A DNA stretch of 64,000 nucleotides, taken from contig NC_068983.1 of assembly GCF_001194135.2 (NCBI RefSeq), positions 104,322,214-104,386,213 of the forward strand, given 5' to 3'. A model generated the notes under the pieces. That model was not told the DNA's origin. It made no database searches and worked only from the letters and a program-made list of their open reading frames with translations. Within the stretch, counting starts at the first letter, position 1, and each line of letters starts with the position of its first letter. Below are positions 6,201 to 30,826 of this stretch, piece by piece. This stretch comes from Octopus bimaculoides. Taxonomy: Eukaryota. A program made the position numbers and the translations under genes.

Positions 6201-9200
6201 GAAACCATTTTAAAATTGTTTATACTCATGCAATTTGTTTTTCAGCTGTTTATTCATTGGTGGTTTACTTTGTCTTATTAACCAGCTTTGTTAACTTATT
6301 CAACCCTTTTTCACTTGGATGTCCTTGAAATTGTACAATCTAGCTGCCCCTCAACCTTTCCTTATCATGCAATCTGACATAGTTGTATGTAGGTCTCTTT
6401 CTCCTTTTTTTCCACTAAATAGCCACATGAAGGATATCTTATCCCTTTATAATGTGGCTTGACATAACCATTATCACCTTCTGGTAATGTCAGTCTTAAC
6501 TGCTTCTACTTTTCTGTGCACCTCATTATGACACACGTGAATCCATAGCATCTTACATAATCAGGGTTGTTTAAACACTAATGCATTCCTTTTAGTTGTT
6601 CATTGTAAAGCAATACAGAACACAGCACAGCAGCATGCATACTCTTACTCTTTTACTTGTTTCAGTCATTTGACTGTGGCCATGCTGGAGCACTGCCTTT
6701 AGTCGAGCAAATCAACCCCGGGACTTATTCTTTGGAAGCCTAGTACTTATTCTATCGGTCGCTTTTGCCAAACCGCTAAGTTACGGGGACATAAACACAC
6801 CAGCATCGTTTGTCAAGCAATGCTAGGGGGACAAACACACACATATACATATATATACATATATACGATGGGCTTCTTTCAGTTTCCGTCTACCAAATCC
6901 ACTCACACGGCTTTGGTTGGCCCGAGGCTATAGTAGAAGACATTTGCCCAAGGTGCCACGTAGTGGGACTGAACCCAGAACCATGTGGTTGGTAAGCAAG
7001 CTACTTACCACACAGCCACTCCTGCGTATGTGCGTTTTTGTGGTGAATGTAGTTATTGCTCTTGTTATTGTTGTTGTTTACTCTCAAGTCAGCCTTTATT
7101 GAACAAATCTATACTCAGAGGCATTCCAGCCGACTTTCTTGTCTCTTTCTTGAGCACAATGAACTTAGAACCACATTATCCAATATGTGTTCTTTTCACT
7201 AAGACAGCATTGTGTGCTTTGAGGGAGATTTGGCAACTAATTCTAGCAGTCAAGTGACCGTTTGGAAGTTGGCTTGTGACATCATTGATTTATTTGAAAG
7301 TTAGAGTGTATATAACATATATAGAGGAAATAATTACTAAAGAGTACATAGGTAAGATGTCAGTGTTGCTGTTGTTGTTGCTTATGTGTTTGATTTTTGT
7401 ATTTGAAGGTTGTTGTTTGCTGATTGTATTGACCATTATTTTAATAATTTCAGATATGATATTAGCTGTGGGCTATTCTGATGGAATGATAAAAGTGATT
7501 CGTTTCAACTTGACATGTGGCATTGTGTCTGACAGCGAAGATGTTTGGGCTGATCCTGATTTAATATCTGTAAATGCTCTCAGTTGGCAATGCCTCGACA
7601 TCCATCAGGTTAGAATGTGATCTTACAATAAATTTTAGTCTTGCATCAATTTACATTTATTTCTTGAATAAACTGCGCTATGACTGCAGGTTTGTGAGCT
7701 GGATTTTTGACCACAGAATTTGGAGGTCATCACTATAGCTATTGGTGGCATATCTTGAGCAAGGCATATAACTCTATTTCACTTTGCCTTACTTGACAAA
7801 AGTTGATTTTTACCTTACTTGACAGTTGACTGGTTAGTAGTAGCAATAGCATTCAACTGTGAAAAAAAATTTTCTTTTGAATTGCTCAGATAAAAGCCAT
7901 CCAATCCATGCAAGTATGGTTAAAAAAAAAGAATATATGCAAAATAACTACAATAAAAAAAAACATAGAAAAATGATATTGTATTTGGAATAGAGAACTA
8001 ACTCTGCTCACCAACACTTGTAGATAGAATCTAGGAAATGTTTAAAGAAAAACATTTATTCATTATTTCTTATGTAACATTTTTCTTTCTTCTGTTCCTT
8101 CTAAATTTTTTGGCCTTATCTCTTCTGCTTTTATGTTTCATCCTACTTTCAGAATCTGTTTTTCTCAGCTCAGCATAATAGCCCCACTATCTTAAAACAG
8201 CATGAACTTAGTACTTCATGTTTGTTCATTTAACCTTTAACCTTTATCAAGCTTATTTCATATTTCACCCTAGCTTCTCATCTTTCAGGACACTTTTCTC
8301 ACAAATGGAAATATCTCTACCTTAACTAATTAAAAAAACAAAAATGCATTAAAGTACATTAAATTAATTTTTGACAAGTGTAAAGAATTATGCATTAAAA
8401 CATTGACGCATAACTGCATAAAGGTTAAGGTTATTGTTGTAGTCTGTCATTTCATAGAATCAGCATCTAACCATGGATGTATTTCCTACTTCAGAAGTCA
8501 TTTACTAGTGGAGTGGTTTATTCAACCTTTATAATGAATGTCAAGCTATATTGCACTATGGACCAGTACACATAAGCATGAGATTTTTCAGTCTCACATA
8601 ATTCTGATATTATTAAGTAGCATATGACAATTATAAAATACCCAGTACCACAACTATCATAAATAGTTAAGCATTTGTTCCACTTTAGATAGATTTAACC
8701 TAACATTGTCTCTCTATCGCAGCTGATTCCTAACTAATTTCCATTTTAGCTCAAAACATCTTAATGCTATTTTCCTTACTGACCTTGTTTTTCCTGTATT
8801 CTACATTATGCTTTTAACATTGCTCATACAACCACCCTTTTGTAGTAAAAGAGAATGACTTTGTTATCAATAAGGTCTATAATTCTCAATATTTCTTGAG
8901 ATCATTTAACTGTTTTAAGTGTCATTAAACATATACCTGAACTGTACAGAATTTGTTACTATAGTTAGTTTTACCATACAATATTCAAAATAGCACAACA
9001 GGTATAGTACCATAATATTGGTAGTGTATATCTAATTTCCTTTTATGTGCTTCTAACCATATATGTTTTTATTTTCTTTACAGGATCAATGGCTTTTGTT
9101 TGCCTCAAAAGATCTTTTTATAATGGCTTTTGTGTTAGACAGAGCTAAATTAACTTGTATTCAAATGGTACACATCAGAGGACAGTACAATCTTTCCTGT

Positions 9201-12200
9201 ACAGGTAAAATATATTCGTAAATATATACATATTAAACTACTTGATGAAAATCATCATCATCTTTATGGGTTTTTTTATGAAGTGAAATTTTGTATATAC
9301 TAATTATTAGGCTTTTGCTTTAAATTTCAGTGAAAGATAAATTAGGGTCAGAACTGTGAGGTTAAGATCACCTCAAAATTAATCAAGTGTTTTATACCTG
9401 AGCCAAGGGCTTTGTGCAATTTGTAAACAGAAATTATGCAAAATGCTGTGTGTGTGTATGTTTGTGTGCATGTATCATGGTGAATGATATATATATCCAT
9501 TGGTTAGAAAATTAATATATCTGTTTGTTGAACCAAAATACCTTGTGAAATTTATCCCCCTAAATTGGAACTTAAGTTCTTGTTACTCTTAACATTGAAA
9601 ATGCAATGAACCAATGATTGGCCCATTAAAAACCAATGACACAGTTTATTACAAAATGTGATATAAATTTCTTTCTGAACTTAAAAAAAATTTAAATATA
9701 TCATCTTCCATCTACAAATTATCTTTATTTTCCAAATGACTTTGTCATTTTACGAGTTTACTAATTTTTAGTAAATTTTTACAAGTTTACTAATTTTCTC
9801 CCATATACTTCGGTTAATTTCATTGTTAATAAGGTTTTAATTGTTATTTTTTACTAATTTTCTTTCAGGTATGTCCTCGCGTAGTGGTACATTGGCTCTC
9901 TCGGCTTCTGATGAAAAGGTTCAACTTATAAAAGCTACAATGAAGGATGAAGGTAAATGATGACACTCCTTATTCTCAAATAGTGGTTAGTGTCTTCTAC
10001 ATTTCCCAGTTATTATAGAATACCTTGTTGGCATTAAAGAATATTACTTATTATCAGGATAGTTATGTTACTAAAACTAAGTAGTTGCATTGATTTGTAC
10101 CACATTCCTGGCAGTGAGGTCTCTTAATTTTCTCTAAGCCTTCTTTTTACTATAATATAGCTTATAAGAGTAAAAGCACTTTATTTTCTATTGCCAAAAT
10201 ATGAATAAGATTTTATAAGTAGACGATATCAACCAACTGAGGGAGTAGGATCAAATAACCTACAATTTAAATCAAAGACCCCTTTTTTAATCCTCAATTT
10301 TAGCCATTTCATTTCTTCTGCTACGCAGTCTTATTTCTCTTTTCCTATAAAGCATACATCAAATAATACATGCAGTCCTTCTTAAGAATTTGTTTTGCTC
10401 TTATGTATTCTCACCAAACGAGACATTTCTAACTCAGTAATATCTATGTTAACCATATATGTGTCACACCAACCTGTCTGATTAAAAAAAAGCCCTTACA
10501 AGCTAATGGGAAGAATCAACCCTCATTTTTCTGAGACAGAGCAACTAAAACAACAGAACAACAGAAGCTACTACTGTCATCTGATATATAATTATATAAT
10601 ATATAATCTGTTGTTAGGTAAATTGGAAACTGCATGAAGATAGTTTTGATGGCATGTAAATTACCTTTGATGATTAGTATGATACTTCATATTCTGGAAT
10701 TGATAAAATGCATTCCAATAATATGAAGGGGTGCTGAAAAGTTCCTGGCTTTGGGTAAAAGAAAATACAGGAGGATCAGTTAATTATGATTTAATTAAAC
10801 ATATTCTCCTCTCGGATTCACACACTTATTTCAGCAGTCCTTCAGTTTTTGTAAACCCTTTAAAAGAAGCCAGAAAGCTGGTCTTCCAACTAGGCCTTTT
10901 GTGATACCCTTAAACCCAGGAACTTTTCAGCATTCCCATGTATACTGATTTGATTCAATCTTTAATTTTTTTACAGTCATTCATCCATGCTTGCATAGCT
11001 GTCAACTTTGTCTTTCATTCCTTCAGGGCTGATAAAATAAAGTACCACTCACATACTGTGACTAATGTAATTGACTTGCCACCCACCTCCTCCAAATTTC
11101 TGTTCTTAAACTATGCAACTGGGCCAGTGTCCCATTCAGAGAGAGTGTTGTAGTCTTGGTCATTTGTATGCCATGGAAAATGGGTAACTAGCCTTATGAA
11201 TCCTAGGGATCAAAAAAATAAAATAGAGGCAATAAGTTGTTTTTTTAAGCAGTTATTTACTTTATCACAATTAGAAATTCTGTACAAATTCTCATATGAA
11301 AAGATAATTTTATAAATATTCAAGACACATGTTTCACAATAAACATTTCCTCCAAAGAATCTAGCTCAAGTTGCAAAACAATACATCATCATCATCATTG
11401 TTTAACGTCCGCTTTCCATGCTAGCATGGGTTGGATGATTTGACTGAGGACTGGTGAAACCAGATAGCTACACCAGGCTCTAATCTGATTTGGCAGTCTC
11501 TCTACAGCTGGATGCCCTTCCTAACGCCAACCACTCTGAGAGTGTAGTAGGTGCTTTTACATGCCACCGGCACGAAGGCCAGTCAGGCGGTACTGGCAAC
11601 GGCCACGCTCAAAATGGTGTATTTTACATGCCATTTGCACAGGAGCCAGTTTGGCAGCACTGGCAACTATTTCGCTCGAATGTCTTTACATGTGCCATCT
11701 GGCACAAATGCCAGGAAGGCAATGCTGGGCACAGGTGCCATTGACAGTTTCGCTTTCGCTTGCCCCAATAGGTCTTCGCAAGCCGAGTTTCGTTTCCAAT
11801 GAAAGAGACGACGTTGGCATGGGTGCCAGTCATCGAATTTAATTCGATTTCGATTTCACTTGCCTCAACAGGTTTTCGCAAGCGAAGTTTAGTGTCTAAT
11901 GAAGGAAGGTACATATAAGTGGGCTGCCTGAGGCCTTCAATTTAGGTCTCACTTGGCTTGCCGGGTCTTCTCACACACAGCATATTTCCAAGGCTTGCCG
12001 GGTCTTCTCATGCACAGCATATTTCCAATACAAGTGATATCAAATTTTAAAATTAATTGAAAATGTCTAAGTAACATTGTAATATAAGCTTTCAGTGTAA
12101 TTCAGACTGCCTCATGGTCCCAGCAGACAAAATGGAAAAGGTGTTGCCCTGGAGGGTAGTGAGGGAGATGTGCTGGAACATCCACTCTGACTCACAGGGC

Positions 12201-15200
12201 TCACACTTGCAGACAGCCATCTCTGCTCTAATAGCAGTGAGCAGGGATGTGATAAAGCAACTAAATTAATGAGTTAAACCAAGCTTATGTTCCAAACTGC
12301 AATTCTCTCCAGCAGTTATTTTGACACCTGGATATCATTTAGGAGTTGAACCACTTTTTTTTCTTCTCATACAAGTTAGGTAGATTGTTTTAGGGTGCAA
12401 CTCTAGTAAGATCTTAACTCATGACCATATACTCAATAGTCCAGTATTTTGACCCCTCAACTAATGTACCTCTTATTTACTTATATAAAATTAGTGTTTA
12501 TAAAAAGATTGTACAATCAATCACTATTTATATTATCAACTACCTATAAAACAGAAGAATATGTGATGAGTTATGACCCTAAGAATGAAATCATTAATAT
12601 TTCAATAGATCAAGGCAGCCAGAATCATTAGCACGCCAGGCAGAATGCTTACTCTTTTACTTGTTTCAGTCATTTGGCTGCGGCCATGCTGGAGCACCAC
12701 CTTTAGTCGAGCAAATCGACCCCCAGGACTTATTCTTTGTAAGCCTAGTACTTATTCTATCGGTCTCTTTTGCTAAACTGCTAAGTTATGGGGACGTAAA
12801 CACACTAGCATTGGTTGTCAAGCAATGGTGGCGGGGGGACAAACACAGACACGCAAACACACATACATATATATATATATACATGTATACGACGGGCTTC
12901 TTTCAGTTTCCGTCTACCAAATTCACTCACAAGGCTTTGGTCGGCCCAAGGCTATAGTAGAAGACACTTGCCCAAGGTGCCACGCAGTGGGACTGAACCC
13001 GGAACCATGTGGTTGGTAAGCAAGCTACTTACCACACAGCCACTCCATCCATCTTTACCTTCAGAGTTCAAATTCCCCAAGGGTCAACTTTGCTTTTCAT
13101 CCTTCCAAGGTCAATAAAATAAGTACCAGTTGAGCATTGGGGTCAATGTAATTGAGTGGACCCTCTCTTGTAATAGCTGCTCTTGTGCCAAAATTTGAAA
13201 TCAATATTTCAATAGATCATGTCAAAATTTTAATGTTTGTTATAATTAATTTTAGAAATAATCTTCAGTTTCTGATTTTGTACTCATTCATTTTCTTTTA
13301 CCCTATTTCCAGAGTTAAAGTTGGATAGTAAATTATTTCCTATAACTATCGACTGCCCTGTTTTTGCTTTACAATACATCGGTGTAGCTCTCTCACCAAA
13401 TGCTTCATTGTTAGCTGTTGTCGCTTGCCCTGCTTGCCCTTTTGATCAGAAGCAATTGAAGGAACCTTTGATGGTAAGCTAAGATGTTGTCATCTTTTTA
13501 TTATATGTCATTTTCCAGACTTTCAGCATCCCCCCCTTAGCCTAATTGTCATTTATTCATATCTAATAGTAAACAGTAAGATCTACCTTATACATGGAGA
13601 AATACAAAAAAATTGAGTGGATCACATCTTCATACACATGTAAAGAAACAAAAAACATACTCTTACAATTACAACATGATACACATATTTGTATATAAAT
13701 TCAAAAAAGGATAAAAATCTTTTACAAGAATTTTATCAGGAAGCCAGTGTGTAAAAAAATTCATAAGGGAAATTTCTATTCCCAAGAATATAATTATTCG
13801 TTTATATTTATATAAGGGCATTACTACAGAATAATGCTACACAACAGTTGTGTGACATTATTCTGTAGTAATGCCCTTATATAAATATATATATATATAC
13901 GCACACACACACACATTCTCTATTACTATTTTGTACATTTACATGAAAAAGATACTCTTAAAATTAGATCAGTTATTAGAGGTAAGTACACATGCACGCA
14001 CATCTTACATTGTAATGTTACTATGCAAAAGTAGTTCAATTTTTGCTTCTATGATATAATATTACTTTTTATACAACCTTCCCCTGCACTCTTTCTTTTC
14101 TCTCTCTCTCCTTATTTTTTCTCTGTCTATAAGTCTAGGAGCTTTTGCTTATGTAAGAAATTACTATTTTTTGTCTCTGTTTATTTTTATAGCTGTGTGT
14201 CAGCCGTCTGAGCTTGTGGCCAGAATACCCTGATATTCTGCAGCTCTCTGAACATAGTAAGTAGTTTTTTGATTTGTATCGATCATGACTAAATGTGAGA
14301 GTAAATATACATCATTTTTTGAGCGAGATCATTGCCAGTGCCCCTGGACTGGCTCTTGTGCGGGTGACACATAAAATACACCATTTTGAGCATGGCCGTT
14401 GCCAGTACCGCCTGACTGGCCTTAGTGCCGGTAGCACGTAAAAGCACCCACTACACTCTCGGAGTGGTTGGCGTTAGGAAGGGCATTCAGCTGTAGAAAT
14501 TCTGCCAAATCAGATTGAAGAGGGGTGTAGCAATCTGGTTTCACCAGTCCTCAGCCAAATCGTCCAACCCATGCTAGCATGGAAAGCGGACATTAAACGA
14601 TGATGATGATGGTGTGAAATAATACATGCTTGAATATATAATGAGTAGAAATCTTAATACAGTTATTGTTTTATGTTCCTTTTCTATCCACGTTTATCTG
14701 CTTTCATTAGTTGAATGGTTAACAACCTACAGTAAAATATATTTTTTACACCAGTTCAAATAAATCAATTTATACTTTTGCAAGTATCCAACTTTAATGT
14801 CACGAAAAGTATGTAACATGAAGAATAAAGTAAATGATGAAATTTAAGGTGTGCAAGGGAGTGCTGAAAAGTTCCTGGCTTTATGGGTATTGCAAAAGGC
14901 CTAGCTGGAGGCCCAGTCTTCTGAATTCTTTTACAGGGCTTAGAAAAACTGAAAGACCCCTGCAATAAGCGTATGAATCTGAGAGGGGAATATGTTCAAT
15001 AAAATCATAATTAACTGATCCTCCTGTATTTTCTTTTACCCAAAGCTAGGAATTTTTCATCACCCCTCTTATATGTATATAACACATCACTGGTATCACA
15101 AGCCAGCTTCTAAATGGTCACTTGACTGCTAGAAATAGTAGCCAAATTTCCATCAAATCACACACTGCTGTCTTAGAAAAACGAATACATTGGATAATGT

Positions 15201-18200
15201 GGTTCTAGGTTCATTGTGCCTGGGAAAGAGACAAGAAAGTCAATGTTGGAATGCCTCTGAGCATAGATTTTCTCAACCAAAGCTGACTTAGGAGTAAATA
15301 ACTACAATAACAAGAATAATAGCTATATTGGTCACAAAGATGCACATGCATACTGCTCTGCTGTGCTCTGTATTGCTTTACAACGAATGACTAAAATCAT
15401 AATTAACTGATCCCCTGCATTTTCTCTTACCCAAAGCCAGGAACTTTTCAACACCCCTTGTATGTTGTTTAAGGTACTAGATTATAGTTTAGTCAAAAAC
15501 TAAGATAACCTTATGTACCAACTTTATTATGTTACAAATAAAAGATTTATTGTTCCACTTTGTATCAGCATTAGAAAATGGCAGATGCATTCTGACATAT
15601 GTTTATGTCTCAGTTGGCACCACTGTAAAATAGGGGATGTAAATTACACTCTGTAACACAATTTTAGTCCTTGGGTAGCAATTGTTATTTCCTATTTGCT
15701 TACCCCTAAAAAGTATGAAACTTGGCTAATATTTCCTTCAAACTTTGCTTTTGTTACATTTATTCAAACCCCAAAGATGATACTCCCCCACTACTCCTGC
15801 TCATGATCAGAGATGCACATATTGTCAGCCACTAAGGGACATGCTCAAGTAGTTACGGTCAAGCAAATGACAAGCAAATCTGTGGTATTGAGCAGAATAT
15901 TTGCTATAAGGATATTTCTGCTTCAGCAACTCAGTGCTGAATCTGTCTGAAATGTAATGGAAAATAGGTCAGTTTCAAAACATTGATGTCCAGGTCACAA
16001 AAACAAAGTTTAAAGGGAATAGTATTAATTTCCTTTGATTTTTTGACAGAAACAAATAAGAAATAACACTTATTGACTAAAGACAATAAAAAAAGATTAG
16101 ATTTTGTGAGACTGTGTTATCAAACTGTTTTTATGGAAAGAGGGAGAATGGGCAGAAATGGTCAAAGAGAGTGGCTGAATGAAAGCCTGAACTGTCTAAA
16201 ATATTTCTCTTCATTAAATTGTTAACTATATTGCAGCTCACATTTACTGTTTTACAATGCTTGTTTGTTAGCCAAATTACAGACTTTTATTTCTATTCAA
16301 AGATTAAAGAAAGTGAATATTTATATGTTCCTTCTATTACCATGATGATGAGACTGCCTTTTAAAAGGTATTGAGATATGAACCTGTGAGTAATTATCTA
16401 AGTGGTCAATCAATCCACTAGAAATAGAAGCCAAACCTCACTCAAATCACATGCTGCCTTCTTAAAAAAAGGTTGGATAATGTAATCCAGGGTACATTTT
16501 CCCTGAAAAAAAGGGGATTGTCATAATTTTAATGTCTTTGATTGTAGGTTTGCTTAATCAGAGTTGACCTGGGGCTAAACAACTACTAGATAATGTGGTG
16601 TTATGGATGACTTATAGTCATACACAGTGAAGAGTAAGTGAAGCATAAGTTGGTTTCTAGTTTATTCTAATATTCATTATAGTTGTTTGGCTCCTCACTT
16701 GTATATTACTTAGCAATTCATTCTTTGTTTTCCATGAAAATAACTTAATTATCAAAAGTTGTTTCTCTGTATTATTATTTACTAATTGTTCTTGTCTGTT
16801 TCAGGGGGAATTCGAGATATCCATGATGTACTGCTTCTTTATCTATGGGGTTTGATGAATGACAAACCTCTGATAGCTCCATCTGTGTTGCACCTTCTCA
16901 CAGATATGGACTCCTGGCCTGGTCTCTCTCTCACTCAACTACGAATGATCAGGTATTTATGTTATTCTAAATGTTTTACATTATTTCCGATTTCATCATC
17001 CATCGTTTTAAATTCGGGGTTTGTCCCCATTAACGGGGATGTCCGGAACTACCTCAATACCATAGCAACTGCCCTCACACCATCTCGCCATCTTGCCCAG
17101 TTTTGGGTGTCCTCCCTTCTCAAGCCAACCCTCCCAATCTCCTCCTCCACTTGTCCCCTCCACATTTTCCTCGGTATACCTCACTTTCACTGTCCTTTTA
17201 CCTCAAACTCTAGCACCCTCTTCAGTACATGCTCCTCATCACATGCCCATACCACCACACTCCATTCACCCTTGCCAGCCATTCTACTGATTCCTCCAAC
17301 CCCAGCATCCCCATCAAGTCCTCAGTCCTCCTCTTATCAAACAGCCTCAGGCCATGCATTTCTCTCACCATTGCTCTCTCAGTCCTCAAAATTGCCATCT
17401 CTCTCTCTCTCTCAAACACCATGTCTCACTCCCATACAGCATTGCAGCTCTCACACAACTCCTATAGACCTTTCCTTTCGTTTTCAATGAGAACCTTTTC
17501 CCGTATAACAACACTCCACATTCCCTGAACTTCACCCAGCCAAGTCTCACTCGTGCTGTCACAGCTGCTTCACATCCATCGCTTACATTCACCCTATCTC
17601 CCAAATAACAAACCCTGTCACTGTCTCCATCTCATCACCTCATCCAGCCTTCCAGCTCCTTTCTCATATCTCCTACAAACAACCTCTCTCACCAGTCTTG
17701 GGGTCACCTTCTTCATTTTCATACATCTATCATGAATCCATTTCTCACATCATTAGAAATTTATTAAAACAAAGAATAATTTTTTCTTTTTTAAATTCAA
17801 TGATTGATTAATTCATTTTTAGATGCCTTTTATCACTGGATAAAAATACACGCAAACTTATAATCATGGGGGAACATAGCTTTGATCTTGTAAGTATTTC
17901 TTTTTCCTCCTTTTTTGACTTTGTTAATTTAATAAAAATGGCATTTTTTTAATGTAGGTAAAATGGCCTAGTAGTTAAAGTATTGAATTGCAATATCTTG
18001 TATAGTTACTTCAAATTTGTTTCAATTTTAATGTTGTGTTGTTGCTGCTTCAATTGAAGTTCATTGTTGCAATTTGAGTTGAAGATATTCTGCTACTTTC
18101 CTGGATTGTTTTACTGTATTTAGATTAGCAGGACAGTTAGGAAGTATGGGACAATTGCAATCTGGACAAACGTTGGTGATTTCTAGTTCTATTTGACTGC

Positions 18201-21200
18201 AGTAGTTCTTCAACATGAACCAGAAACTGTTGTGCAATTGTGCTAGTATTTTTTATGTTTTCAGTGGTAGGCATCCTTCTTTCTTATTGATCATAAGTTG
18301 GTCAGGTGATTAATATTCAAAGCAAGTAACCCTAAAGTGCATTTTCAACTGCTAAGCAGTAAAATTTCTTTGTTGTAGTCTCTTTGCTTTTCATTGCTAA
18401 TAAATTTCTAGACTATATGAATTTTATTGAATTTTGTGAATATACTTACCTTTCTTTTTTTGTCTGGATCTGAAAATAATTGGAGATATGTGGGATATCT
18501 GTTGTGGTATTGAGCTAGGTATTTGCACACTCAGAAAGTATGAGTATGATTGTACTTTCAGAATTTTTGCTTTGTGATGTAGCGGTCTTCAGCTGCTATT
18601 TTGACGCAACTTGTGGCCACTCAAAGAAATCTCTTACTATGATCTCTAAGGCCTTGAATTGTGGTACTTTAAGAACAACAGTTTCTGCTGTTTTTGCTTT
18701 TGTTTTCTGTCTTTCAGATTTTGCTCGGTAGAAACCTTTTTGTTGTAAAGCGGTCTTTTACCACTGTTGTATCTGTCTTTTGACGATGGTTGTCACTCTG
18801 AAAGATATTGTTATATTCTGACGTCGTCGATAGAGTGTTTCTATCTGGCACTGTATGACCCCCAGTTGTACAATGTTAATATCCTCAAAAGGTTGGATCG
18901 ATATAACGTCCACACAGTATCACAGTATAATTACTATATCAGCTCAGACATGACTATCAACACAGTCTATATGTACTCTCATCCTTCCTGACCTTCTGGC
19001 GTCGACCGGCTATTGGTTTCTTTATAGTGGCTGACTACTACCACTTTTTACGAGGAGAGGTGTATGGTTTCACTTTACAACACTTTCAAATGGCCTTTAC
19101 TTTCACACTTGTAGCAGTTGAGTTTTTTTGTTGTGATTCATCAGTCTCATTGCTTTTATTTCTGCACCCATGCTGGGACACAGATTTAGAGTAGCTCTGT
19201 GGCTATTAGGACTTACATATCCAAGTAGGCTGCACCCATTCATATTGTTTCTAGTTTCCCTGGTACTCACTATGTGCTTATGCTGTGCCACAAAGATGAC
19301 AATGAGCCAAAGTTCAACATCATTGCCAATGGCCTTCACCATCACCTCATGTTTGTATTGTCTCCTGTTTTCTAACACTAACCTATGGGCAGGTTTATGA
19401 CACACTAGCTCAGCCTGTTTTCTTACTTCAGTGTCAGCTTTGAAAGCCAAGAATGACATTTCTCTATGCTCAATCCCAGCTGAAGTAGGAGGTATCACTC
19501 AACACATCAACCAGGACTACCTCTAGTTGCTGCTTTGAGGGCATAAGGAAAACCCCTGTGTTTTTAAACTGACAAAAATATGTAATCTTCTTTTTCACCT
19601 TTGGTTAAAGACTATGAGAGGGGAAGCATTTTCTTGATCACATATCTCTTGTTAAGTCACTCGTGTTTAGTGTCTTTCTATTACTACCAATGTTAGTGAA
19701 GGAGTTATGTTGCTTAACCCTTTAGTGTTTAAACCGGCTATATCCGGCCCAAATATTCTACTCATTTTAGGCTCAAACTGGCCAGAACCAGTATCTCACA
19801 CCTACCCTGCAATGTCATTCTAAAAATAAACAATTACATCTTTCCACTCTTGAAGCTACAAGATAATACCAGATTAATTTTTTTTTAATGTAAATGAATA
19901 AGGATTACTTTTGACATATTAATTTGAACGTTAAAGGGTTAAAACAACGCTTTCATTAAAATTGGCCTGTTTTCTTCACTCTGTGAAATGTGTATTGTTG
20001 TTAATTGACATTTTTAACTGTTAAGATATTATTTTTTCATGTTCAATGTGCAGGTTGCTTTGAAATTAAAATTTGCTTTCTATGTAATGTTCATTTTTCA
20101 CTTTTTTTTTTCTTTCTTTTTTTTAATTTTTGAGTGAGTATTTTCTCTGATAAGTTATCTTGAGTTGATTGTAAACAAAAGCAGAAAAATAAGATTGTAT
20201 CAAAAACATCAGCTCTTGTGTCTCCCCTGTACTAAATGAGACATTCAATGTATTCCAGGACAATCCCTATTGAAAACTATCCCTAAGGAAATATTTTTCT
20301 TTCAGTTGCGCTTAGTGAAAAATCTAAAATTCTTAGAGTAAGATGGAAATACATCTGCTCATAATAATATTTAATCATCTTTTCTACTATAAGCACAAGG
20401 TTTGCAGTTCTAGGGGAGGGTGCTAGTTGATTACAGCAGCCCATTACTTAACTGGTACTTATTTCATTGACGCTCTCCAAGGATGAAAGCCAAAATCAAC
20501 TTCAATGGAATTTAAACTCAGAACATAAATCTAAAGTGCCAGGAGAAATGCTGCTAAGCATTTTGTCTGGCATGCTAATGATTCTGCCAGCTAGCTGCCT
20601 TATAATAACATTTAATAATAAAAAGACTAATGATTTATAATAATAATAATAATAATTTCAAATTTTGGCACAAGGCCAGCAATTTCAAGGGAGGAGGTAA
20701 GTTGATTCCATCGACTCCGGTGCTCAACTGATACTTATTTCATTGACCCCAGAAGGATGAAAGTGAGCAAAATGCCAATAAGCATTTTGCCTAGCATGCT
20801 AATGATTTCCAATAATAATAATAATCCTTTCTACTATAAGCACAAGGCCTGAAATTTTGTGGGAGTGGGCTAGTTGATTACAATGACACTGGTGCATAAC
20901 AGGTGCTTATTTCATTGACTCCAAAAGGGTGAAAGGCAAAGTCGACCTTGGCAGAATTTAAACTCAGAAGAAAGACAGACGAAATGCCACTAAGCATTTT
21001 GCCCGGTGTGCTAACAATTCTGCCAGCTCGCTGCCTAAGAAGAAGTGGTGGTGGTGGTGGCAGCAGTGGTTATAATAATTATAATAATAATAGCTGTTGT
21101 TGTTGTTTCTAGCATGGTCAATCTTCTCAACCATCACTTTCATCATCAAGTTCATCATTTGCATCTAACAATAAAGAATCACTGAAGTATCTTCATACTC

Positions 21201-24200
21201 TGCTCATGTTCAAGTTTATCCAGCCTTATATTGTCAATACTTTGATCCCACGTATCACAGAACTGGATAATTTAGGTAAGTGCTCATAATGAAAGATTCC
21301 TTGCAGTATTTTAGATTTTTGCTTCTCACAGATGATTTGTATTATTCATATTTGCCTTTTTACATTGAAATGGTTTATGTCAGCACATAACACTATATTA
21401 GTTTAGGTTTATGTTCTGCAAAATTAATTCTTAGGCAATTTTCTTTTCTTTCATCATCATCATCATCATTTAATGTCCACTTTACATGCTAGCATGGGTT
21501 GGACGATTTGGCTGAGGACTGGTGAACCAGATGGCTACACCAGGCTCCAATCTGATTTGGCAGAGTTTCTACAGCTGGATGCCCTTCCTAATGCCAACCA
21601 CTCCGAGAGTGTAGTGGGTGCTTTTATGTGCCACTGGCATGAAGGCAAGTCAGGTGGTACTGGCAACGGCCACACTCAAAATGGTGTATTTTACATGCCA
21701 CCTGCACAGGAGCCAGTCCAGCGGCACTTTTCTTTGTTGACTCAAAATAAGAATTGACTTGGGCCAACTCATGTAAGCATGAAAAGCAGATATAAAATGG
21801 GGATACAATGCCTCTGTATGTGTGTGTGTGTGTGTGTATGTGTGTGTAGTAATAAGAAAAACAGGAAATGTAATTGGCATTTCTAAGCTTTATATCACAT
21901 ACATATGTTTTATTAAGCCAACTGACATGCTTCCTTATTATTATAGCAAAAAAATGCAATATGATGTTTGTTGCATGTATGTACCCTAGTCATGTGTATT
22001 ATGCATAAGCATAATAGAGGGTGATAGAAAGAGAGATAGTGGAATAATCTTAAATTTGATATATGTCATTACTATGATCATAGTCATTATTTAATGTCCA
22101 TTTTCCATACTGGCATGATTTGGCTGGTTTGACAGGAACTGGCAAATCAGAAGATTGCACCAAGCTCTCCTGTCTGCTTTGGCATGGTTTTACAGTGTAC
22201 TGAGTGCTTTTTACATTACACCAGCAATTGTTAAGTCACTGAGTAACTTGCAAAATAGGACACTGCAACTGAGTGGGAAGAGTAGTAGCAAGAGACAGAA
22301 AAAAGGTGTCTTGCAGTAGAAAAGAAACATGGCTGTCTTGTGGGGTGGGGGAGAAGATGATGGAAATGTTATGGTGGTGTTGGGGAGACTTATACCTTAG
22401 TTACAGGTTGGTGTACATAGCAAAGTGGACTGGAGATTGGTGAGGGTAAGTGGGTGAGTTCACAATATTGTAAACAGAGAGTAGGAGATGGAAGGTGGAG
22501 GAAAGTGCAGCTAGTAGATAGAGGGAGGGGTGTACTTGAAGGATATATTGTGGGAGAAGAGATTCAATAAGGACAAAGTGTGTGCCAGTAGGTTTGTACA
22601 GGAGAGTGAGAGATAAAGGGGCAGGGAATACAGTGGATGATGAGTCCAATTTGGAGAGGTGGAGATGTTGGAAGATGAGTTATGAGGTAGAGGTTTGTCT
22701 GGGGACAGATTGTGTGCAGAGGGGGTAGGCATGGGCATAAAGGACATGCCTTTTTGATGTTTTCTCTATCTTTTTCTTTCTATATATCTTCCACCTTTGA
22801 TTTCTGTTTATTCTTTCAAAACTTGCATTTTTGCTAACTTAAAGCCATTGCCTTTTTATCTTTTATACAGAATTACGAATTATTTCTTCAATCTGCCAAT
22901 GGTTAAACGCCCGGATGTACCACTTCTCCAGATGGGATTCTATTGCAGCAGCGGTCAAGAAAATGCTCTCTTCCATAGAACATTCAATCATCATATTTGA
23001 AGAAGATTGTCCAATTTGTGGAGAACATATCCTTTTTTCTTGTTAAATTAACAGATAAAGTAAAGTCATTTTATATTTTGTCTTGTTTCAGTCATTGAAC
23101 CACAGCCATGCTGGAGTATTGCGATAAACGGTTCTATTTAAAAGAATCGACCCAAAGGCAATGTGTTTTTTTAAAGCCTGGTACTTAGTTTATTGGTCAG
23201 CAGTGGCATTTTATAGTGTGTCCGATAATTTATTTGGCTTCTTCCCCTCAGTCTTGTTTATGCCTCTGATGACTAATTAGTTTATTGGGTATCTTTTGCT
23301 GAACCACTAAGTTACAGCAATGTAAGCAAACCAACACCAGTTGTCGAGCAGAGGTGGGGGACAAAGACACACACACACACATACACATATACAACAGGCT
23401 TCTTTCAGATTCCATCTACCAAATCCACTCATAAGGCTTTGGTTGGTCCAGTGCTATAATAGAAAACACAATGAAGGTGGCGAGCTGGCAGAAACGTTAG
23501 CACGCCGCGCGAAATGCTTAGCAGTATTTCGTCTGCCACTACGTTCTGAGTTCAAATTCCGCCGAGGTCGACTTCGCCTTTCATCCTTTCAGGGTCGATT
23601 AAATAAATACCAGTTACGCATTGGGGTCGATGTAATCGACTTAATCCGTTTGTCTGTCCTTGTTTGTCCCTTCTATGTTTAGCCCCTTGTGGGCAATAAA
23701 TAATTATATAATAGAAAACACTTGTTCAAGATGCCATGCGGTTGGGAAGCAAATTTCTTACCATACAGCCACACCTGTGCCTATTTTATAAATTATTAGT
23801 TTCTTTTAAATGCAGAGAATTTGATTTTTATATTCTCATTAGAAGTAGGGTTAGTATTAATAATAGTGAACTATAAGTATTATATAATATTTAGTTTCAT
23901 CCCTCTGGGTTCTGAGTTTGAATCTTATAAGGCTTGACTTTGACACTCATCTGGTTCAGTCCTACTACGTGACACTTTGGGCAGGTGTCTTACTATAGCC
24001 TTGAGCCAACCAAAGCCTTGTGAGTGGATTTGACAGACAGAAACTGAAAGAAGCCCATTGCATGTATATGTGTGTGTGTATGTGTGTTACCACCGCTTGA
24101 TAATTGATGTTGGTTTGTTTAAATCCCTGTAACTTAGTGGTTTGACTAAAAGTTCTTCAAAGTAGTGCCCCAGCAGGGCTGCAGTATAATGACTGAACAG

Positions 24201-26066
24201 ATAAAAATGTGATGCAAAGGAAATTTGGCTGCTATTTCAAGCGGGTCAAGTAACCCTCTAGAGCAATGGTTCATGACATTTTTTTGTAGCACCCTCCCAC
24301 TCCTAATCCACCCCTGTAAGTAGTTGTTATGCCTAACACCTACATAAGTGGCAAGTGAGGTATGATAACTAAAGTAACATTCTCCATGGATGATAATTTA
24401 TAAATTTTTCTCTAAAAATGGATCATGTAAGCTTTTAACTGTGAAATGATAAAAAATTAATAAAGATAAAAGTTATAAATTTTCTTTATACATTGCAAGT
24501 TAATGACTTTTCCGTGCCTTATGAAACCTCATTTTATTTTAATAACCATTACTAGTTTTACCCTCTATGATATAATTACTACAACAGGTAAAATTTGTTA
24601 CATCACCACCCTCTAAAACCTAATACCCTTTTCTTTGGGGATGGTACTACCCAAGTTTAGGACCTCTGATCTAGAGGCTCCCTCATTAGCTTGAATAGTT
24701 TTTTGGCTTACTTGCTATGTTTTAACTGTGTTCTATGTTAACAGGATTGTAATTTATTAGTTTATTAACCTCATCTTTAGAGATCACTTTTTTTTTTTTA
24801 ATGTTTACATCTACAATTCAACTGATTTCATCTTTTTCCTGGATGTTTACATAGTATCAGACTGGATTTGAACTAAGAATCTTTATTTCTAAACTATGGT
24901 TAACACTTTCGTTACCAACCCGGCTGAAACCGGCTCTGGCTCTGAGTACAAATGTCTTGCTTTCATAAGTTTTGAATTAAAATCTTCCACCAAACCTTAG
25001 TCACAATTTATGTTCCTAACACTAGCTTAATGATAACTAAGTTATTTTACTAAATTCTTTGTTATATTTAAAGTAATTGAAAGAAACACAGAGCATCTCA
25101 AAATAAATACAGTAACGAAAGGGTTAATAATGTTTTTTATCCACTAGGCCACTTGAACATTTTAAAGTTGTACCTATGTTGTATGCTTAAAGTTGTATGC
25201 TTAAAAATTGGTAAAAATTCTGTTGAACTTGTTATTTAATGTGGTCTTCAAATATTGTGCAAGCTACGTTTGGAAGAACTGGGACACATTATCAGTGATG
25301 TATCCTGAAGTCATCAGGTGTTTTGAGCTTTTCAACATCAGACATCTTCACCCAGTGAACCCAACTGAGGTTCATTAGATCTCTCCACTTGCATCCCAGA
25401 AGCAGTCCATAGATCAGCACTTTTTATCCAAATTACATCTGGTAGTTTTCTCTACCATCTCTATGAAGCCCAAGTGGTTGAGAATTGGCCTTCTTCTTCA
25501 CCCTTTCAATGAAGCCAAATTGGTTGAGGGCTTTGCAAGGTGAACACCCTAAAAAGACTCTGGTGCCCACCTCTATCGGCTTTTAATGGATATTCTTAAA
25601 TAGTTAGTGGGATTTATTGATATACAATACGATACCATTCATGGAAATTGAACAACATCAATATTTGAAACAAATTTTGTTGAAAACAATGTCCAGTATT
25701 AAGGTCAAATGTGGACTTGGCTTTCATTTTGAAATGTTGAATTGCTCCTTAACTATCTTACTTCTTGAAGATGTGGATGTTATGTCAGTAGCCTGTTCTG
25801 GAAACCACACATTTGGTAAGAGTTTTCTCTCTTTAATTTCTATATCATGTACAGAGTTTCAAATGATGGTGATGGATCTCTTCATTTGAAAATGAAGCTT
25901 CAGTTGTTCAATCGACTGAATTCATGTGTAAGTGGGCAGAACATTACACTGACATGTGTATGTTCAACATATTTCTCAGACTGATTGGGAAGTCTGTATG
26001 CAAGTGCCCAAATATTTCAACTGGCTGGAAAAATGCAATGGCTATTGAAGTCCTTTGAACTCAACA

Positions 26067-26106
<40 letters not shown>

Positions 26107-27475
26107 NNNNNNNNNNNNNNNNNNNNNNNNNNNNNNNNNNNNNNNNNNNNNNNNNNNNNNNNNNNNNNNNNNNNNNNNNNNNNNNNNNNNNNNNNNNNNN
26201 NNNNNNNNNNNNNNNNNNNNNNNNNNNNNNNNNNNNNNNNNNNNNNNNNNNNNNNNNNNNNNNNNNNNNNNNNNNNNNNNNNNNNNNNNNNNNNNNNNNN
26301 NNNNNNNNNNNNNNNNNNNNNNNNNNNNNNNNNNNNNNNNNNNNNNNNNNNNNNNNNNNNNNNNNNNNNNNNNNNNNNNNNNNNNNNNNNNNNNNNNNNN
26401 NNNNNNNNNNNNNNNNNNNNNNNNNNNNNNNNNNNNNNNNNNNNNNNNNNNNNNNNNNNNNNNNNNNNNNNNNNNNNNNNNNATATATATATATATATAT
26501 ATATATTAATCAATAATTGTGAGTCTGACAAAATATATTCTGTCAGAGTTATGGATTAAAATTTTGACTTTCAAACTTCTTACTTTGAGTTCTTGATTCT
26601 AAATAGTCTGACAGTGTTTCTTTCAACCTGCCACTTTCTGATATATATATAGATACACACACACACACATACATTTCAGTATCACTGCTAAAAGCAGGCA
26701 GCACTAAACTAAAGTTAATCGGTTTATTCTGGTTTCTTTGAAAATATCTTGTTCAACTATTACAGGTCGATGCTGTAAATCCTTACTTCCCTGTAAGGAG
26801 ATTCCTTACCGAAGATGTTCTCTCTGTAGTAGTGTTGCTATGCCGATAAGTGTAACTACTGGTAAGTATATATTTATCTTTCTAAGTACTTTTTCAGTTT
26901 CAGTCTTTCTAGTCATTTTTATGCTTTTAGATTTCAGAAGTTACATGTATTTTATCATTGAATACAGTGTATCTAGTCCTCAGATTTTTTTTGGGGTGGG
27001 GTTATAATTAGTTTGACATTTTGAATCAAATTATTTCATAATAAGTTTACCAAGGTCACAGAATAAACTCACTACACACTAACAAGATAACCATAGCCAC
27101 AGCCACTTCACTTTGCAAAAATAAAGAATAAAGAATAAAAACTACAAAAACATCAGTTGTAAAATAATTACACCAATAATTAGTGCAAATGTGAATTTAG
27201 CCAATCATCATGTCTATTCTAGTATTCAAAGGAAAGTGTAAATAACATTAAGCAAAAAAAAATGTTATGATATGTTATACATTCATGCTATATTTGGTTT
27301 GTAAATTGTAATGTATCAACAAATCAACTACCTTTTAAAAATGTCTATTTTTTCTAAGCTAAAATTGTCTTTTTTTTCTTTTTCACCACCAGATGCAGCA
27401 GGTCTGTGTACAATTGACCCTCATAGTTGTACTTTTTGTGAAGATTCCCTTTGTGGATCAAGATATTTAGTTTAA
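292..27475 (+). CDS. GTF3C4: General transcription factor 3C polypeptide 4 (TFIIIC90/delta) ortholog, 5'-partial, 17 exons: 292-409, 674-752, 1485-1605, 4092-4260, 5869-5948, 7454-7608, 9084-9204, 9869-9952, 13313-13473, 14193-14256, 16805-16952, 17823-17889, 21113-21275, 22871-23026, 25762-25815, 26766-26861, 27393-27475(TAA)
   Basis: The exons join in frame (1919 nt, about 638 aa plus stop) using GT-AG sites and one AT-AC intron. Peptides match remembered GTF3C4 motifs: GYKSANWSPKGADDVGRCVLACLAIDHRLTI (cf. GFKYTSWSPMGCDANGRCLLAALTMDNRLTI), AMKNGDVVFWKVHFP, IGVALSPNASLLAVV, and the C-terminal Cys-rich domain EEDCPICGELLEDVDVMSVACSGNHTFGRCCKSLLPCKEIPYRRCSLC...SCTFCEDSL. An AATAAA follows near 27572. 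Confidence 0.9.
1023..1407 (-). mobile_element. tRNA-derived SINE (octopus OR1-like) with (CAA)n tail
   Basis: tRNA-like head with A/B boxes on the minus strand (GGAGGCGCAATGG...GGTTTCGATTCCCAGACC). 12-bp TSD AGTATGAACTTT at 1011-1022 and 1408-1419. Nearly identical to 28579-28952. Confidence 0.85.
1745..3517 (+). mobile_element. RTE-clade LINE, internally deleted and decayed (APE endonuclease, post-RT C-terminus, 3' UTR, (GAT)n tail)
   Basis: ORF 1756-2304 has AP-endonuclease motifs (CCIQEVRW, GVGGVGILL, IISAYAPQ, GEFNGHVG). ORF 2443-2829 has ARVRIAWAKFRKLLPLL...KGRLYDACVQTAMLHGSETW. The element ends TTAAATGATGATGATGA. Confidence 0.85.
4320..4546. mobile_element. piggyBac-type MITE family (similar elements about 19715-19941, 24900-25107, 33395-33605, 46317-46440, 47228-47562, 48376-48512)
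   Basis: Ends TTAA-CCCTTTAGCATT ... AATGCTAAAGGG-TTAA, i.e. CCC/GGG termini within TTAA. Confidence 0.7.
5400..5692. repeat. Minisatellite, about 26-bp unit GTGGTACCAGCACCAGTGCTTTT(T)AC, about 11 copies
   Basis: Directly visible tandem units with no unique spacers, inside an RTE-tail repeat. Confidence 0.9.
6648..7025 (-). mobile_element. Abundant tRNA-headed SINE with internal (TA/CA)n (other copies about 12650-13045 -, 23085-23780 -, 23945-24205 +, 28265-28430 -, 29520-29765 -, 32650-32822 -, 49225-49375 +, 58225-58608 +)
   Basis: Head GGCTGTGTGGTAAG...GGGTTCAGTCCCACT, then GGCACCTTGGGCAAGTGTCTTCTACTATAGCC, and tail GACTGAAACAAGTAAAAGAGTA, repeated throughout the window. Confidence 0.8.
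10724..10940. mobile_element. mariner-type MITE family (other copies about 14853-15072, 15390-15460 partial, 55333-55560)
   Basis: TIR GAGGGGTGCTGAAAAGTTCCTGG / CCAGGAACTTTTCAGCA and a shared internal sequence among copies. Confidence 0.7.
11385..12030 (-). mobile_element. RTE 3'-UTR-derived repeat with (GAT)n tail (other copies about 5255-5700 -, 14325-14610 +, 21458-21730 -, 49380-49680 +, 56540-56770 -, 57835-58175 +; related subfamily about 28050-28260, 29320-29520, 31975-32200, 35380-35630)
   Basis: Shares CAGCTGGATGCCCTTCCTAACGCCAACCAC and GGAAAGCGGACGTTAAACGATGATG with the 3' end of the RTE at 3300-3517. Confidence 0.8.
16990..17745 (-). mobile_element. RTE-type LINE 3' fragment in GTF3C4 intron 11
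   Basis: Minus-strand peptides VTARVRLGWVKFRECGVLL...KGKVYRSCVRAAMLYGSETW and WYGHVMR, with frameshifts. Confidence 0.8.
23470..23710 (+). mobile_element. Second tRNA-headed SINE family, nested in an older SINE (other copies about 32450-32625 +, 36410-36642 -, 37705-37916 -; three degenerate tandem copies 20383-21040 -)
   Basis: GGCGAGCTGGCAGAAACGTTAGCACGCC...GAGTTCAAATTCCGCCGAGGTCGAC...GCCCCTTGTGGGCAATAAA, with 11-bp TSD ATAGAAAACAC at 23459-23469 and 23711-23721. Confidence 0.8.
24264..24668. mobile_element. Older hAT (Charlie-like) MITE
   Basis: Degenerate CAATGGTTC.../...GGACCTCTG ends flanked by CTCTAGAG and ATCTAGAG (NTCTAGAN target). Confidence 0.55.
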
Positions 27476-30224: not shown

Positions 30225-30826
30225 CAATGTTCTACAACTGGATGCCCTTCCTAACGCCAACCACTCAGAGAGTGTAGTGGGTGCTTTTACGTGTCACCCG
30301 CACGAAAACGGCCACGCTCGAAATGGTGTCTTTTATGTGCCACCCGCACAAGCCAGTCCAGGGGCACTGGCAACGATCTCGCTCGAAAATCCTACGGGAG
30401 CCAGTCAGGCGGTACTGGCAACGCCCACGCTCAAAATGGTGCATCTCATGTGCCACCCGCACAAGAACCAGTCCAGGGGCACTGGCAACGATCTTACTTG
30501 GCTTGCCGGGTCTTCTCACGCACAGCACATTTCCAAAGGTCTCGGTCAGTAGTCATCGCCTCGGTGAGGCCCAATGTACGAAGGTCTTGCCTCACCACCT
30601 CAGCCCAGGTCTTCCTGGGCCTACCTCTTCCACGGGTTCCCTCAACTGTTAGGGTGTGGCACTTTTTCACGCAGCTATCCTCATCCATTCTCACATGTCC
30701 ATACCAGCGCAATCGTCTCTCTTGCACACCACAACTGATGCTTCTAATGTTCAGCTTTTCTCTCAAGATACTTACACTCTGACGGGTATTCACATTGACA
30801 TTACACATCCAACGGAGCATACCTAC
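30225..30826 (-). mobile_element. RTE LINE 3' fragment about 100 bp downstream of the LRRC14-like stop codon
   Basis: ORF 30494-30820 (MLRWMCNV...RRLRWYGHVRMDEDSCVKKC...GRGRPRKTW) followed by the RTE 3' UTR also seen at 3050-3517. Confidence 0.85.

What the first reader, a model, noticed from the sequence alone, without database searches (positions are those of the whole stretch)
23027..25770. AT-AC minor intron in GTF3C4 overlaid by an in-frame GT-AG alternative: possible U12-to-U2 conversion intermediate
Seen in sequence: a consensus U12 donor (ATATCCTTTT, 23027), branch site (TCCTTAAC, 25746-25753) and AC end (25761) split the C-terminal zinc-finger region. A GT (GTTAAA, 23042) lies 15 nt inside the donor and an AG (25769-25770) lies 9 nt past the acceptor. 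Splicing that pair also keeps the frame (net +2 codons: CGEHILFSYVDVM instead of CGELLEDVDVM). Retention stops at TAA 23044-23046 and removes most of the finger. Established: AT-AC introns are rare, are spliced by the minor spliceosome and are often rate-limiting; splice-site shifts are a proposed route of U12-to-U2 conversion. Inference: this Pol III factor may be under minor-spliceosome control with a major-spliceosome bypass. GT-AG-only gene predictors would misannotate this junction.
Basis: partly seen in the sequence, partly recalled or inferred. Interest (0 to 1): 0.75.

Follow-up and report, generated by a model that had tools for sequence, protein, structure and literature searches.

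The report
Ancient AT-AC minor intron in GTF3C4
This is a real, cleanly spliced minor-spliceosome (AT-AC) intron in the octopus GTF3C4 gene; it dates back to early bilaterian animals and is already in the public gene model, and the proposed major-spliceosome "bypass" is not used in any RNA data examined.

Summary
RNA-seq confirms the AT-AC junction 23026|25762. It is carried by 161 split reads in three raw-read runs. It is also carried by transcript contigs of eight older runs under three species labels.

The proposed in-frame GT-AG alternative (23041|25771) has 0 of 161 reads. Its donor matches only 4 of 9 consensus positions, against 6-8 of 9 for all 15 real GT donors of this gene. A pair like it arises by chance in 43% of shuffles, and it falls out of frame in cuttlefish. 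Unspliced reads are about 1%, no more than at the neighbouring U2-type introns.

The window encodes residues 89-726 of NCBI's Octopus bimaculoides GTF3C4 isoform X1 exactly. That model already uses the AT-AC junction.

The same intron (third codon after the CxxC, phase 1) is AT-AC with U12-type signals in cuttlefish, limpet, two bivalves, a hemichordate and a sea star. It is absent in an annelid, a tick, a fish and amphioxus. In a chiton it is a U2-type GT-AG intron at the identical position, which is an in-place conversion.

Verdict: this is an ordinary, ancient, constitutive U12-type intron. The dual-use and "conversion intermediate" reading is not supported.

The parts
294..27475 (+). GTF3C4 (TFIIIC90) gene, the part inside the window: 17 exons encoding residues 89-726 plus the stop codon. 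Residues 1-88 lie upstream of the window.
   Evidence: An exact spliced match to P0001, which NCBI names 'general transcription factor 3C polypeptide 4 isoform X1 [Octopus bimaculoides]'. Pfam TFIIIC_delta scores 5.6e-9 and zf-TFIIIC 7e-8. Human GTF3C4 (8cli_B) matches at 2.8e-10 and 1.4e-5.
22871..23026 (+). Exon upstream of the minor intron. It ends ...EEDCPICGE plus the first base of the next codon.
   Evidence: RNA depth rises at 22870 and stops at 23026.
23027..25761 (+). U12-type AT-AC intron, 2735 nt, phase 1. It is the only non-GT-AG intron among the 16 in the window.
   Evidence: 161 split reads in X21-X23 (reported as 23024|25760 with 2 ambiguous letters, loose ends behind 23026). 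Transcript contigs of X1 and X6, X2, X3 and X14, and X4, X8 and X11. Intron table.
23027..23035 (+). U12-type 5' splice site ATATCCTTT, a 9 of 9 match to the AT-AC consensus.
   Evidence: The ATATCCT core is conserved in six other species.
25746..25753 (+). U12-type branch-point sequence TCCTTAAC. The branch A at 25752 lies 9 nt before the last intron base.
25760..25761 (+). Terminal AC of the intron.
25762..25815 (+). 54-nt exon (LLEDVDVMSVACSGNHTF...), followed by a GT-AG intron at 25816-26765.
23042..23043 (+). Intronic GT (CTT|GTTAAA) proposed as an alternative U2-type donor. It is not used.
   Evidence: No read ends at 23041. The only 2 reads covering 23030-23059 run on beyond it. It matches 4 of 9 positions of CAG|GTAAGT.
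25769..25770 (+). Exonic AG (within the GAA GAT codons) proposed as an alternative acceptor. It is not used.
   Evidence: There is no step in depth at 25771 and no loose ends there.
23284..25221 (.). High-copy interspersed repeats inside the intron (about 23284-23739, 23968-24195 and 24880-25221), including an inverted pair at 23364-23461 / 23991-24088.
   Evidence: Depth is 10-100x that of the exons, and comes from reads only 95-99% alike. Contig depth is enormous. Inverted repeats are listed.

Best explanation
The feature is a constitutive U12-type (minor-spliceosome) AT-AC intron in the Octopus bimaculoides orthologue of GTF3C4 (TFIIIC90). It interrupts the C-terminal zinc finger in the third codon after the CxxC, in phase 1.

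Shown: the junction 23026|25762 is the only one used in the RNA examined. It restores the same Cys-x13-Cys spacing as the human protein. The same intron, with the same U12-type signals, is present in other molluscs and in ambulacrarian deuterostomes, so it predates the protostome-deuterostome split.

Inferred from the consensus signals (established knowledge of U12-type introns): U11 pairs with ATATCCTT, U12 pairs with TCCTTAAC, and U4atac/U6atac-U5 catalyse removal.

The nearby GT and AG are incidental dinucleotides, not a second splice-site pair.
For: - Sequence: a perfect 5' splice site and branch-point consensus, and a branch A to 3' end distance of 9 nt.
- Raw reads: 75, 37 and 49 split reads in three raw-read runs. 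The loose-end consensus behind 23026 is TTCTTGAAGATG... with agreement of 0.97 or more.
- Contigs: the same junction appears in contigs of X1, X2, X3 and X14 (organism A), X4, X8 and X11 (organism B), and X6 (organism C).
- Protein: the alignment to human GTF3C4 residues 742-796 is ungapped across the junction.
- Annotation: the public protein P0001 carries CGELLEDVDVM, and the window reproduces it exactly with 15 GT-AG introns and 1 AT-AC intron.
- Orthologues: AT-AC introns at the same codon and phase occur in Acanthosepion pharaonis, Patella vulgata, Solemya velum, Potamilus streckersoni, Ptychodera flava and Acanthaster planci.
- Alternative pair: 0 of 161 reads, a 4 of 9 donor match, 43% chance expectation, and out of frame in cuttlefish.
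Against: - Dependence on the minor spliceosome is inferred from sequence signals and was not tested.
- Only about 6% of each of three raw-read runs was read. All three come from one study, so rare or condition-specific isoforms below about 2% cannot be excluded.
- The libraries look like ordinary cDNA RNA-seq, which says little about splicing kinetics.
- The acceptors in Solemya and Potamilus are inferred from sequence and reading frame, not from RNA.
Confidence: 0.93

Rival explanations
1. The AT-AC intron is overlaid by a functional in-frame GT-AG pair (23042...25770) that the major spliceosome uses as a bypass. This would make the locus a U12-to-U2 conversion intermediate.
For: The GT and AG exist and keep the frame. 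The Cys-Cys loop length varies from 12 to about 19 residues among orthologues, so a +2 aa isoform could be tolerated. Cryptic U2-type sites around minor introns are known to be used when the minor spliceosome is impaired (bioRxiv 10.1101/2020.05.18.101246, abstract seen).
Against: - 0 of 161 junction reads, and no contig in 8 further runs.
- The donor CTT|GTTAAA matches 4 of 9 consensus positions, against 6-8 of 9 for all 15 real donors.
- 43% of shuffles give such a pair.
- In cuttlefish the intronic GT is offset by 17 nt rather than 15, so the pair is out of frame.
- Documented conversions occur in place. The chiton orthologue shows exactly that.
Confidence: 0.04
2. The intron is a U2-dependent AT-AC intron, removed by the major spliceosome despite its termini.
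For: U2-type AT-AC introns exist, for example in sodium-channel genes.
Against: Those introns carry G at +5 and lack the U12 branch motif. Here +5 and +6 are CC, the donor is a perfect ATATCCTTT, and TCCTTAAC sits 9 nt from the 3' end. Both motifs are conserved across phyla.
Confidence: 0.02
3. The junction is an artefact, such as reverse-transcriptase template switching at the 2-nt AC microhomology, or a mis-assembly.
For: The join has 2 ambiguous letters (AC) on both sides.
Against: The same join appears in 11 runs from several studies and three species labels. It preserves the reading frame and the homology to human GTF3C4. It coincides with consensus U12 signals that are conserved in other phyla.
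Confidence: 0.01

Closest known systems
Canonical U12-type AT-AC introns of the minor spliceosome, as catalogued by U12DB, IAOD/intronIC and MIDB
   Same: It has the /ATATCCTT 5' splice site, a TCCTTAAC branch site about 10 nt from the 3' end, AT-AC termini, a single such intron among many U2-type introns in the gene, and deep evolutionary conservation of position and type.
   Different: Nothing mechanistic differs. The host gene is not on the human or mouse lists of minor-intron genes (0 occurrences of GTF3C4 in the Olthof 2019 supplements), because the one vertebrate examined, a fish, lacks the intron. No searched paper pairs GTF3C4 with 'minor intron'.
Twintrons, or nested U2/U12 site pairs that are both used. 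Examples are Drosophila dURP (Lin et al. 2010, PMC2831892) and prospero (from my own knowledge, not checked here).
   Same: A GT..AG pair lies close to the AT..AC pair.
   Different: In twintrons both junctions are seen in RNA and both site sets are conserved. Here the GT-AG junction has no reads, its donor is weak, and its frame is not conserved.
U12-to-U2 intron conversion (Burge et al. 1998 as summarised in Lin et al. 2010)
   Same: The orthologous intron in the chiton Liolophura sinensis is a U2-type GT-AG intron (G|GTAAGA...T11AAAAG|) at the identical codon and phase. The other molluscs examined and two ambulacrarians keep AT-AC.
   Different: The octopus intron shows no step toward conversion: no GT at +1 and no G at +5. 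Loss is more frequent than conversion in the literature, and the same holds here (4 losses against 1 conversion).
Cryptic U2-type splice-site activation around minor introns when the minor spliceosome is defective (Olthof et al.)
   Same: This would be the only plausible setting in which 23042 or 25770 might be used.
   Different: It has not been observed here, and no minor-spliceosome-deficient cephalopod data are available.

Membership tests
U12-type (minor) intron, AT-AC subtype | 5' splice site matching /ATATCCTT immediately after the exon | tested here: met
   ATATCCTTT at 23027-23035 is a 9 of 9 match. The exon end at 23026 is fixed by 161 reads.
U12-type (minor) intron, AT-AC subtype | Branch-point sequence TCCTTRAY roughly 8-15 nt upstream of the 3' splice site | tested here: met
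   TCCTTAAC at 25746-25753; the branch A lies 9 nt before the last intron base.
U12-type (minor) intron, AT-AC subtype | AT...AC termini actually used in mature RNA | tested here: met
   The junction is 23026|25762. The 2-nt ambiguity allows only AT-AC as a recognised terminal pair.
U12-type (minor) intron, AT-AC subtype | Conservation of U12-type signals at the orthologous position | tested here: met
   An ATATCCT donor and a TCCTTAAC-like branch site are found in 6 other species from 3 phyla.
U12-type (minor) intron, AT-AC subtype | Removal depends on U11, U12 and U4atac/U6atac snRNPs | not testable with these tools
   This needs knock-down or inhibition experiments. No snRNA gene lies in the window (Rfam: 0 matches).
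Dual-spliceosome intron / twintron (both U2 and U12 site pairs functional) | Both junctions present in RNA | tested here: not met
   161 AT-AC reads against 0 GT-AG reads. The 2 reads covering 23030-23059 run on past 23041.
Dual-spliceosome intron / twintron (both U2 and U12 site pairs functional) | U2-type donor of usable strength, and conservation of the alternative sites | tested here: not met
   The donor matches 4 of 9 consensus positions, against 6-8 of 9 for the real donors. The cuttlefish GT is shifted by 2 nt, which puts the pair out of frame. Chance expectation is 43%.
U12-to-U2 conversion intermediate | Degenerating U12 signals or a subtype switch (G at +1, G at +5) at the same intron position | tested here: not met
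   The octopus keeps the perfect consensus. Completed in-place conversion is seen only in the chiton locus L005.
GTF3C4 / TFIIIC90 | N-terminal TFIIIC_delta beta-propeller plus C-terminal zf-TFIIIC domain, and orthology to human GTF3C4 | tested here: met
   PF12657 scores 5.6e-9 and PF12660 7e-8. Human 8cli_B aligns at residues 145-207 and 742-796. The window gives an exact match to NCBI's O. bimaculoides GTF3C4 isoform X1.

The most novel reading that the evidence does not exclude
The GT(23042)-AG(25770) pair could be a conditional bypass, used only when minor-spliceosome activity is limiting or in an unsampled tissue or stage. It would yield a +2-aa zinc-finger isoform of TFIIIC90 and couple Pol III transcription to minor-spliceosome status. 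The data exclude use above about 2% in the sampled libraries, but not conditional use.
Probability: 0.03. Interest if true: 0.5.

Novelty: new member of a known kind. Interest (0 to 1): 0.17.

Why it matters
For the scan, this is a textbook minor intron that the public octopus gene model already handles correctly, so it should rank low.

Two modest points have practical value.

First, GTF3C4 carries an ancient bilaterian AT-AC intron that the fish examined lacks, which fits the gene's absence from the human and mouse minor-intron gene lists. Several non-RefSeq mollusc annotations (Solemya velum, Potamilus streckersoni) break at exactly this junction. They lose or corrupt part of the zinc finger, so annotators should allow AT-AC introns here.

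Second, the chiton orthologue is a clean natural example of in-place U12-to-U2 conversion, while its molluscan relatives keep AT-AC. This supports the classical conversion model rather than the shifted-site model proposed for this locus.

Tried and rejected
- a word-indexed protein search with the 101-aa C-terminal peptide found nothing, even though the exact protein is in the collection. The index is lossy for short queries.
- a 2770-aa pseudo-protein made of stop-free segments gave no PDB hit. A curated exon concatenate worked.
- a profile search with a 40-sequence alignment returned only 3 proteins, but it did supply the NCBI names.
- the bird GTF3C4 protein was not on record, so the only vertebrate locus examined is a fish. 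The human exon structure was not checked directly. The only human evidence is the absence of GTF3C4 from the Olthof 2019 lists.
- the IAOD and MIDB-2024 supplements were not held or had no entry, so I could not confirm whether automated minor-intron databases already list this intron.
- no paper pairs GTF3C4 with 'minor intron', or 'U12-type' with 'cephalopod'.
- Rfam found nothing in the window.
- RNA editing in the intronic inverted repeats: considered and rejected. There are many A>G and T>C differences, but the reads there are 95-99% alike and at 10-100x exon depth. They therefore come from paralogous repeat copies, not from this locus.
- Template-switch artefact at the AC microhomology: considered and rejected (see the rival explanations).
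Full report
OBSERVATION. The sequence is as described. The exon ends ...TGT GGA GAA C at 23026. ATATCCTTTT starts at 23027, TCCTTAAC occupies 25746-25753, the intron ends AC at 25760-25761, and the next exon starts TTCTTGAAGATG at 25762. A GT lies at 23042-23043 (CTT|GTTAAA) and an AG at 25769-25770. Joining 23026|25762 reads CGELLEDVDVM. Joining 23041|25771 reads CGEHILFSYVDVM. Read-through stops at TAA 23044-23046. Taken singly, the two U12 motifs are not rarer than chance in 64 kb: 1 match against 2.06 expected, and 2 against 2.28 expected. The significance lies in their placement at in-frame exon ends, and in the RNA evidence.

RNA EVIDENCE. Three raw-read RNA-seq runs of the same species label (X21-X23, about 6% of each read) give one exon-exon junction across this region. 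The tool reports it as 23024|25760 with 2 ambiguous letters. It is therefore equivalent to 23026|25762, and AT...AC is the only recognised terminal pair among the three possible placements. Read counts are 75, 37 and 49, or 161 in total.

On the donor alone, 75, 38 and 48 reads leave the genome exactly behind 23026 and continue TTCTTGAAGATGTGGATG... with agreement of 0.97 or more. In 23030-23059 there are only 2 reads, both in X21, and both run on past 23041, so they are unspliced RNA rather than alternative-donor products. X22 and X23 have none there.

On the acceptor side, depth is 0 in 25714-25758 in all three runs. It is already full from 25762, with no step at 25771. The GT-AG alternative therefore has 0 of 161 reads, roughly below 2% at 95% confidence.

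Transcript contigs from eight older runs carry the same AT-AC junction: X1, X2, X3 and X14 of organism A, X4, X8 and X11 of organism B, and X6 of organism C.

Unspliced signal at the U12 intron is at most 2 of about 163 reads at the donor and 0 at the acceptor. That is no higher than at the 3' end of the upstream GT-AG intron, which has 4 reads in X21. These libraries give no sign of inefficient or rate-limiting removal, although ordinary cDNA libraries are a poor measure of splicing kinetics.

GENE AND MODEL. The exons flanking the intron match Pfam zf-TFIIIC (7e-8). They align without gaps to human GTF3C4 residues 742-796 (1.4e-5), so the AT-AC product keeps the human Cys-x13-Cys spacing. 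Exons at 294-409 and 674-752 match TFIIIC_delta (5.6e-9) and human residues 145-207 (2.8e-10).

A full HMMER scan found a 726-aa protein, P0001 (1.1e-171). NCBI names it 'general transcription factor 3C polypeptide 4 isoform X1 [Octopus bimaculoides]'. A spliced alignment shows that the window encodes its residues 89-726 exactly. There are 17 exons between 294 and 27475, with 15 GT-AG introns and this single AT-AC intron in phase 1. P0001 contains CGELLEDVDVM, so the public annotation already uses the AT-AC junction.

THE GT-AG PAIR IS INCIDENTAL. Within +-20 nt of the true sites there are three in-frame, stop-free GT..AG pairs, and 43% of composition-matched shuffles give at least one. The proposed donor CTT|GTTAAA matches 4 of 9 positions of CAG|GTAAGT. 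All 15 genuine GT donors of this gene match 6-8 of 9. In the cuttlefish orthologue the first intronic GT is offset by 17 nt rather than 15, which puts the pair out of frame.

EVOLUTION. Genomic loci of orthologues were fetched and the junctions read directly (summarised). At the same position (third codon after the CxxC, phase 1) the intron is AT-AC with U12-type signals in six other species:
- Acanthosepion pharaonis: C|ATATCCTCTT...TTTCTTTAACATTTGCAC|
- Patella vulgata: A|ATATCCTTTT...TTCTTAACAATTAAC|
- Solemya velum: T|ATATCCTTTC...CCCTTAACTGAAGTAC|
- Potamilus streckersoni: G|ATATCCTTGA...TCCTTAACACAACCAAC|
- Ptychodera flava (hemichordate): A|ATATCCTTTA...TCCCTAACTCTATGATTAC|
- Acanthaster planci (sea star): A|ATATCCTCTG...TCCTTGACTATGTCATAC|

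In Patella, Ptychodera, Acanthaster and the cuttlefish, these boundaries reproduce the annotated proteins. In the two bivalves the acceptors are my inference from motif and reading frame.

The intron is absent in Owenia fusiformis, Ixodes scapularis and the fish Mugilogobius chulae, where the zinc-finger coding sequence is contiguous. In Branchiostoma belcheri the whole gene is intronless. That fits the absence of GTF3C4 from the human and mouse minor-intron gene lists of Olthof et al. 2019.

In the chiton Liolophura sinensis the same position and phase holds a U2-type intron, G|GTAAGATTTT...T11AAAAG|A. The other molluscs examined and two ambulacrarians keep AT-AC. The simplest reading is an ancestral bilaterian AT-AC intron, with several losses and one in-place U12-to-U2 conversion.

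This matches the published picture. Loss outnumbers conversion, and conversion keeps position and phase, proceeding by a subtype switch and then a +5 C>G change (Lin et al. 2010, PMC2831892). It does not match the shifted-site route proposed for this locus.

ANNOTATION POINT. The public Solemya model reads CQICGG-YILSMQYTLHVRLQSS, which is straight through T|ATATCCTT, and skips the exon SLKEDNLVVTCSRGHLFG. The Potamilus model reads CAICEQ-DILECM..., straight through the donor and on into the intron. The octopus model is correct.

COMPARISON AND VERDICT. Every sequence-level and RNA-level criterion for a U12-type AT-AC intron is met. Actual dependence on the U11/U12 snRNPs is inferred and was not tested. 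The criteria for a dual-spliceosome intron or twintron are not met: both junctions seen in RNA, a usable U2-type donor, and conserved alternative sites. Nor are the criteria for a conversion intermediate met (degenerating or switched U12 signals).

The feature is an ordinary, ancient, constitutively spliced minor intron that is already implicit in the public annotation. Interest is low. The residual novel reading is a conditional bypass under minor-spliceosome limitation, which I rate at about 3%.

Noticed in passing
L005 28734-30043 (Liolophura sinensis, GCA_032854445.2): The chiton orthologue has a U2-type GT-AG intron (G|GTAAGA...T11AAAAG|) at exactly the codon and phase where the other molluscs and two ambulacrarians examined have an AT-AC U12 intron. 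This is a clean natural case of in-place U12-to-U2 conversion.
   Followed up: partly
L002 58769-59309 (Solemya velum) and L006 61958-62721 (Potamilus streckersoni): The public gene models read through the ATATCCTT donor (protein ...CGGYILSMQ... and ...CEQDILECM...). They skip or corrupt the next zinc-finger exon, which is likely a mis-annotation by GT-AG-only prediction. Other models also lack the CxxC half of the finger (Gigantopelta isoform X2 P0004, Saccostrea P0016). Those were not examined at DNA level.
   Followed up: partly
L001 1-2851, L002 1-821, L003 1-303, L005 1-170, L009 1-180 (all on the minus strand, just upstream of GTF3C4): A Methyltransf_16-family gene lies head-to-head immediately upstream of GTF3C4 in cuttlefish, Solemya, Patella, chiton and sea star. 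This is conserved microsynteny and possibly a shared bidirectional promoter across bilaterians. The octopus window starts inside GTF3C4, so it could not be checked there.
   Followed up: no
L007 301-2271 (Branchiostoma belcheri): The amphioxus GTF3C4-like gene is a single uninterrupted ORF of 656 codons. The gene is intronless there, possibly through replacement by a retrocopy.
   Followed up: no
window 23284-23739, 23968-24195, 24880-25221: High-copy interspersed repeats lie inside the minor intron and include an inverted pair (23364-23461 / 23991-24088, 80% complementary). RNA reads there are at 10-100x exon depth, only 95-99% alike, with many chimeric joints. They come from paralogous copies elsewhere, so the A>G and T>C differences are not evidence of editing at this locus.
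   Followed up: partly
window 26040-26530 (N run 26107-26482); further N runs at 52208-52309, 57576-57689 and 62774-63327: There are assembly gaps. The first sits in a (TA)n microsatellite inside the next GTF3C4 intron (25816-26765), so that intron's true length is uncertain.
   Followed up: no
window 30932-31771 (-): A single-exon ORF of 279 aa carries leucine-rich repeats (Pfam LRR_1 1.4e-7, LRR_4 3.4e-7). It lies downstream of GTF3C4 on the opposite strand. Its expression and identity were not examined.
   Followed up: partly
window 1708-2826 (+), 17222-17604 (-), 30494-30820 (-), 34481-34738 (-): These ORF fragments look by eye like transposable-element remnants: LINE-like (...LYGSETW...) and Tc1/mariner-like. 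They lie in GTF3C4 introns and downstream of the gene. Pfam gave no hit for the two fragments tested.
   Followed up: partly
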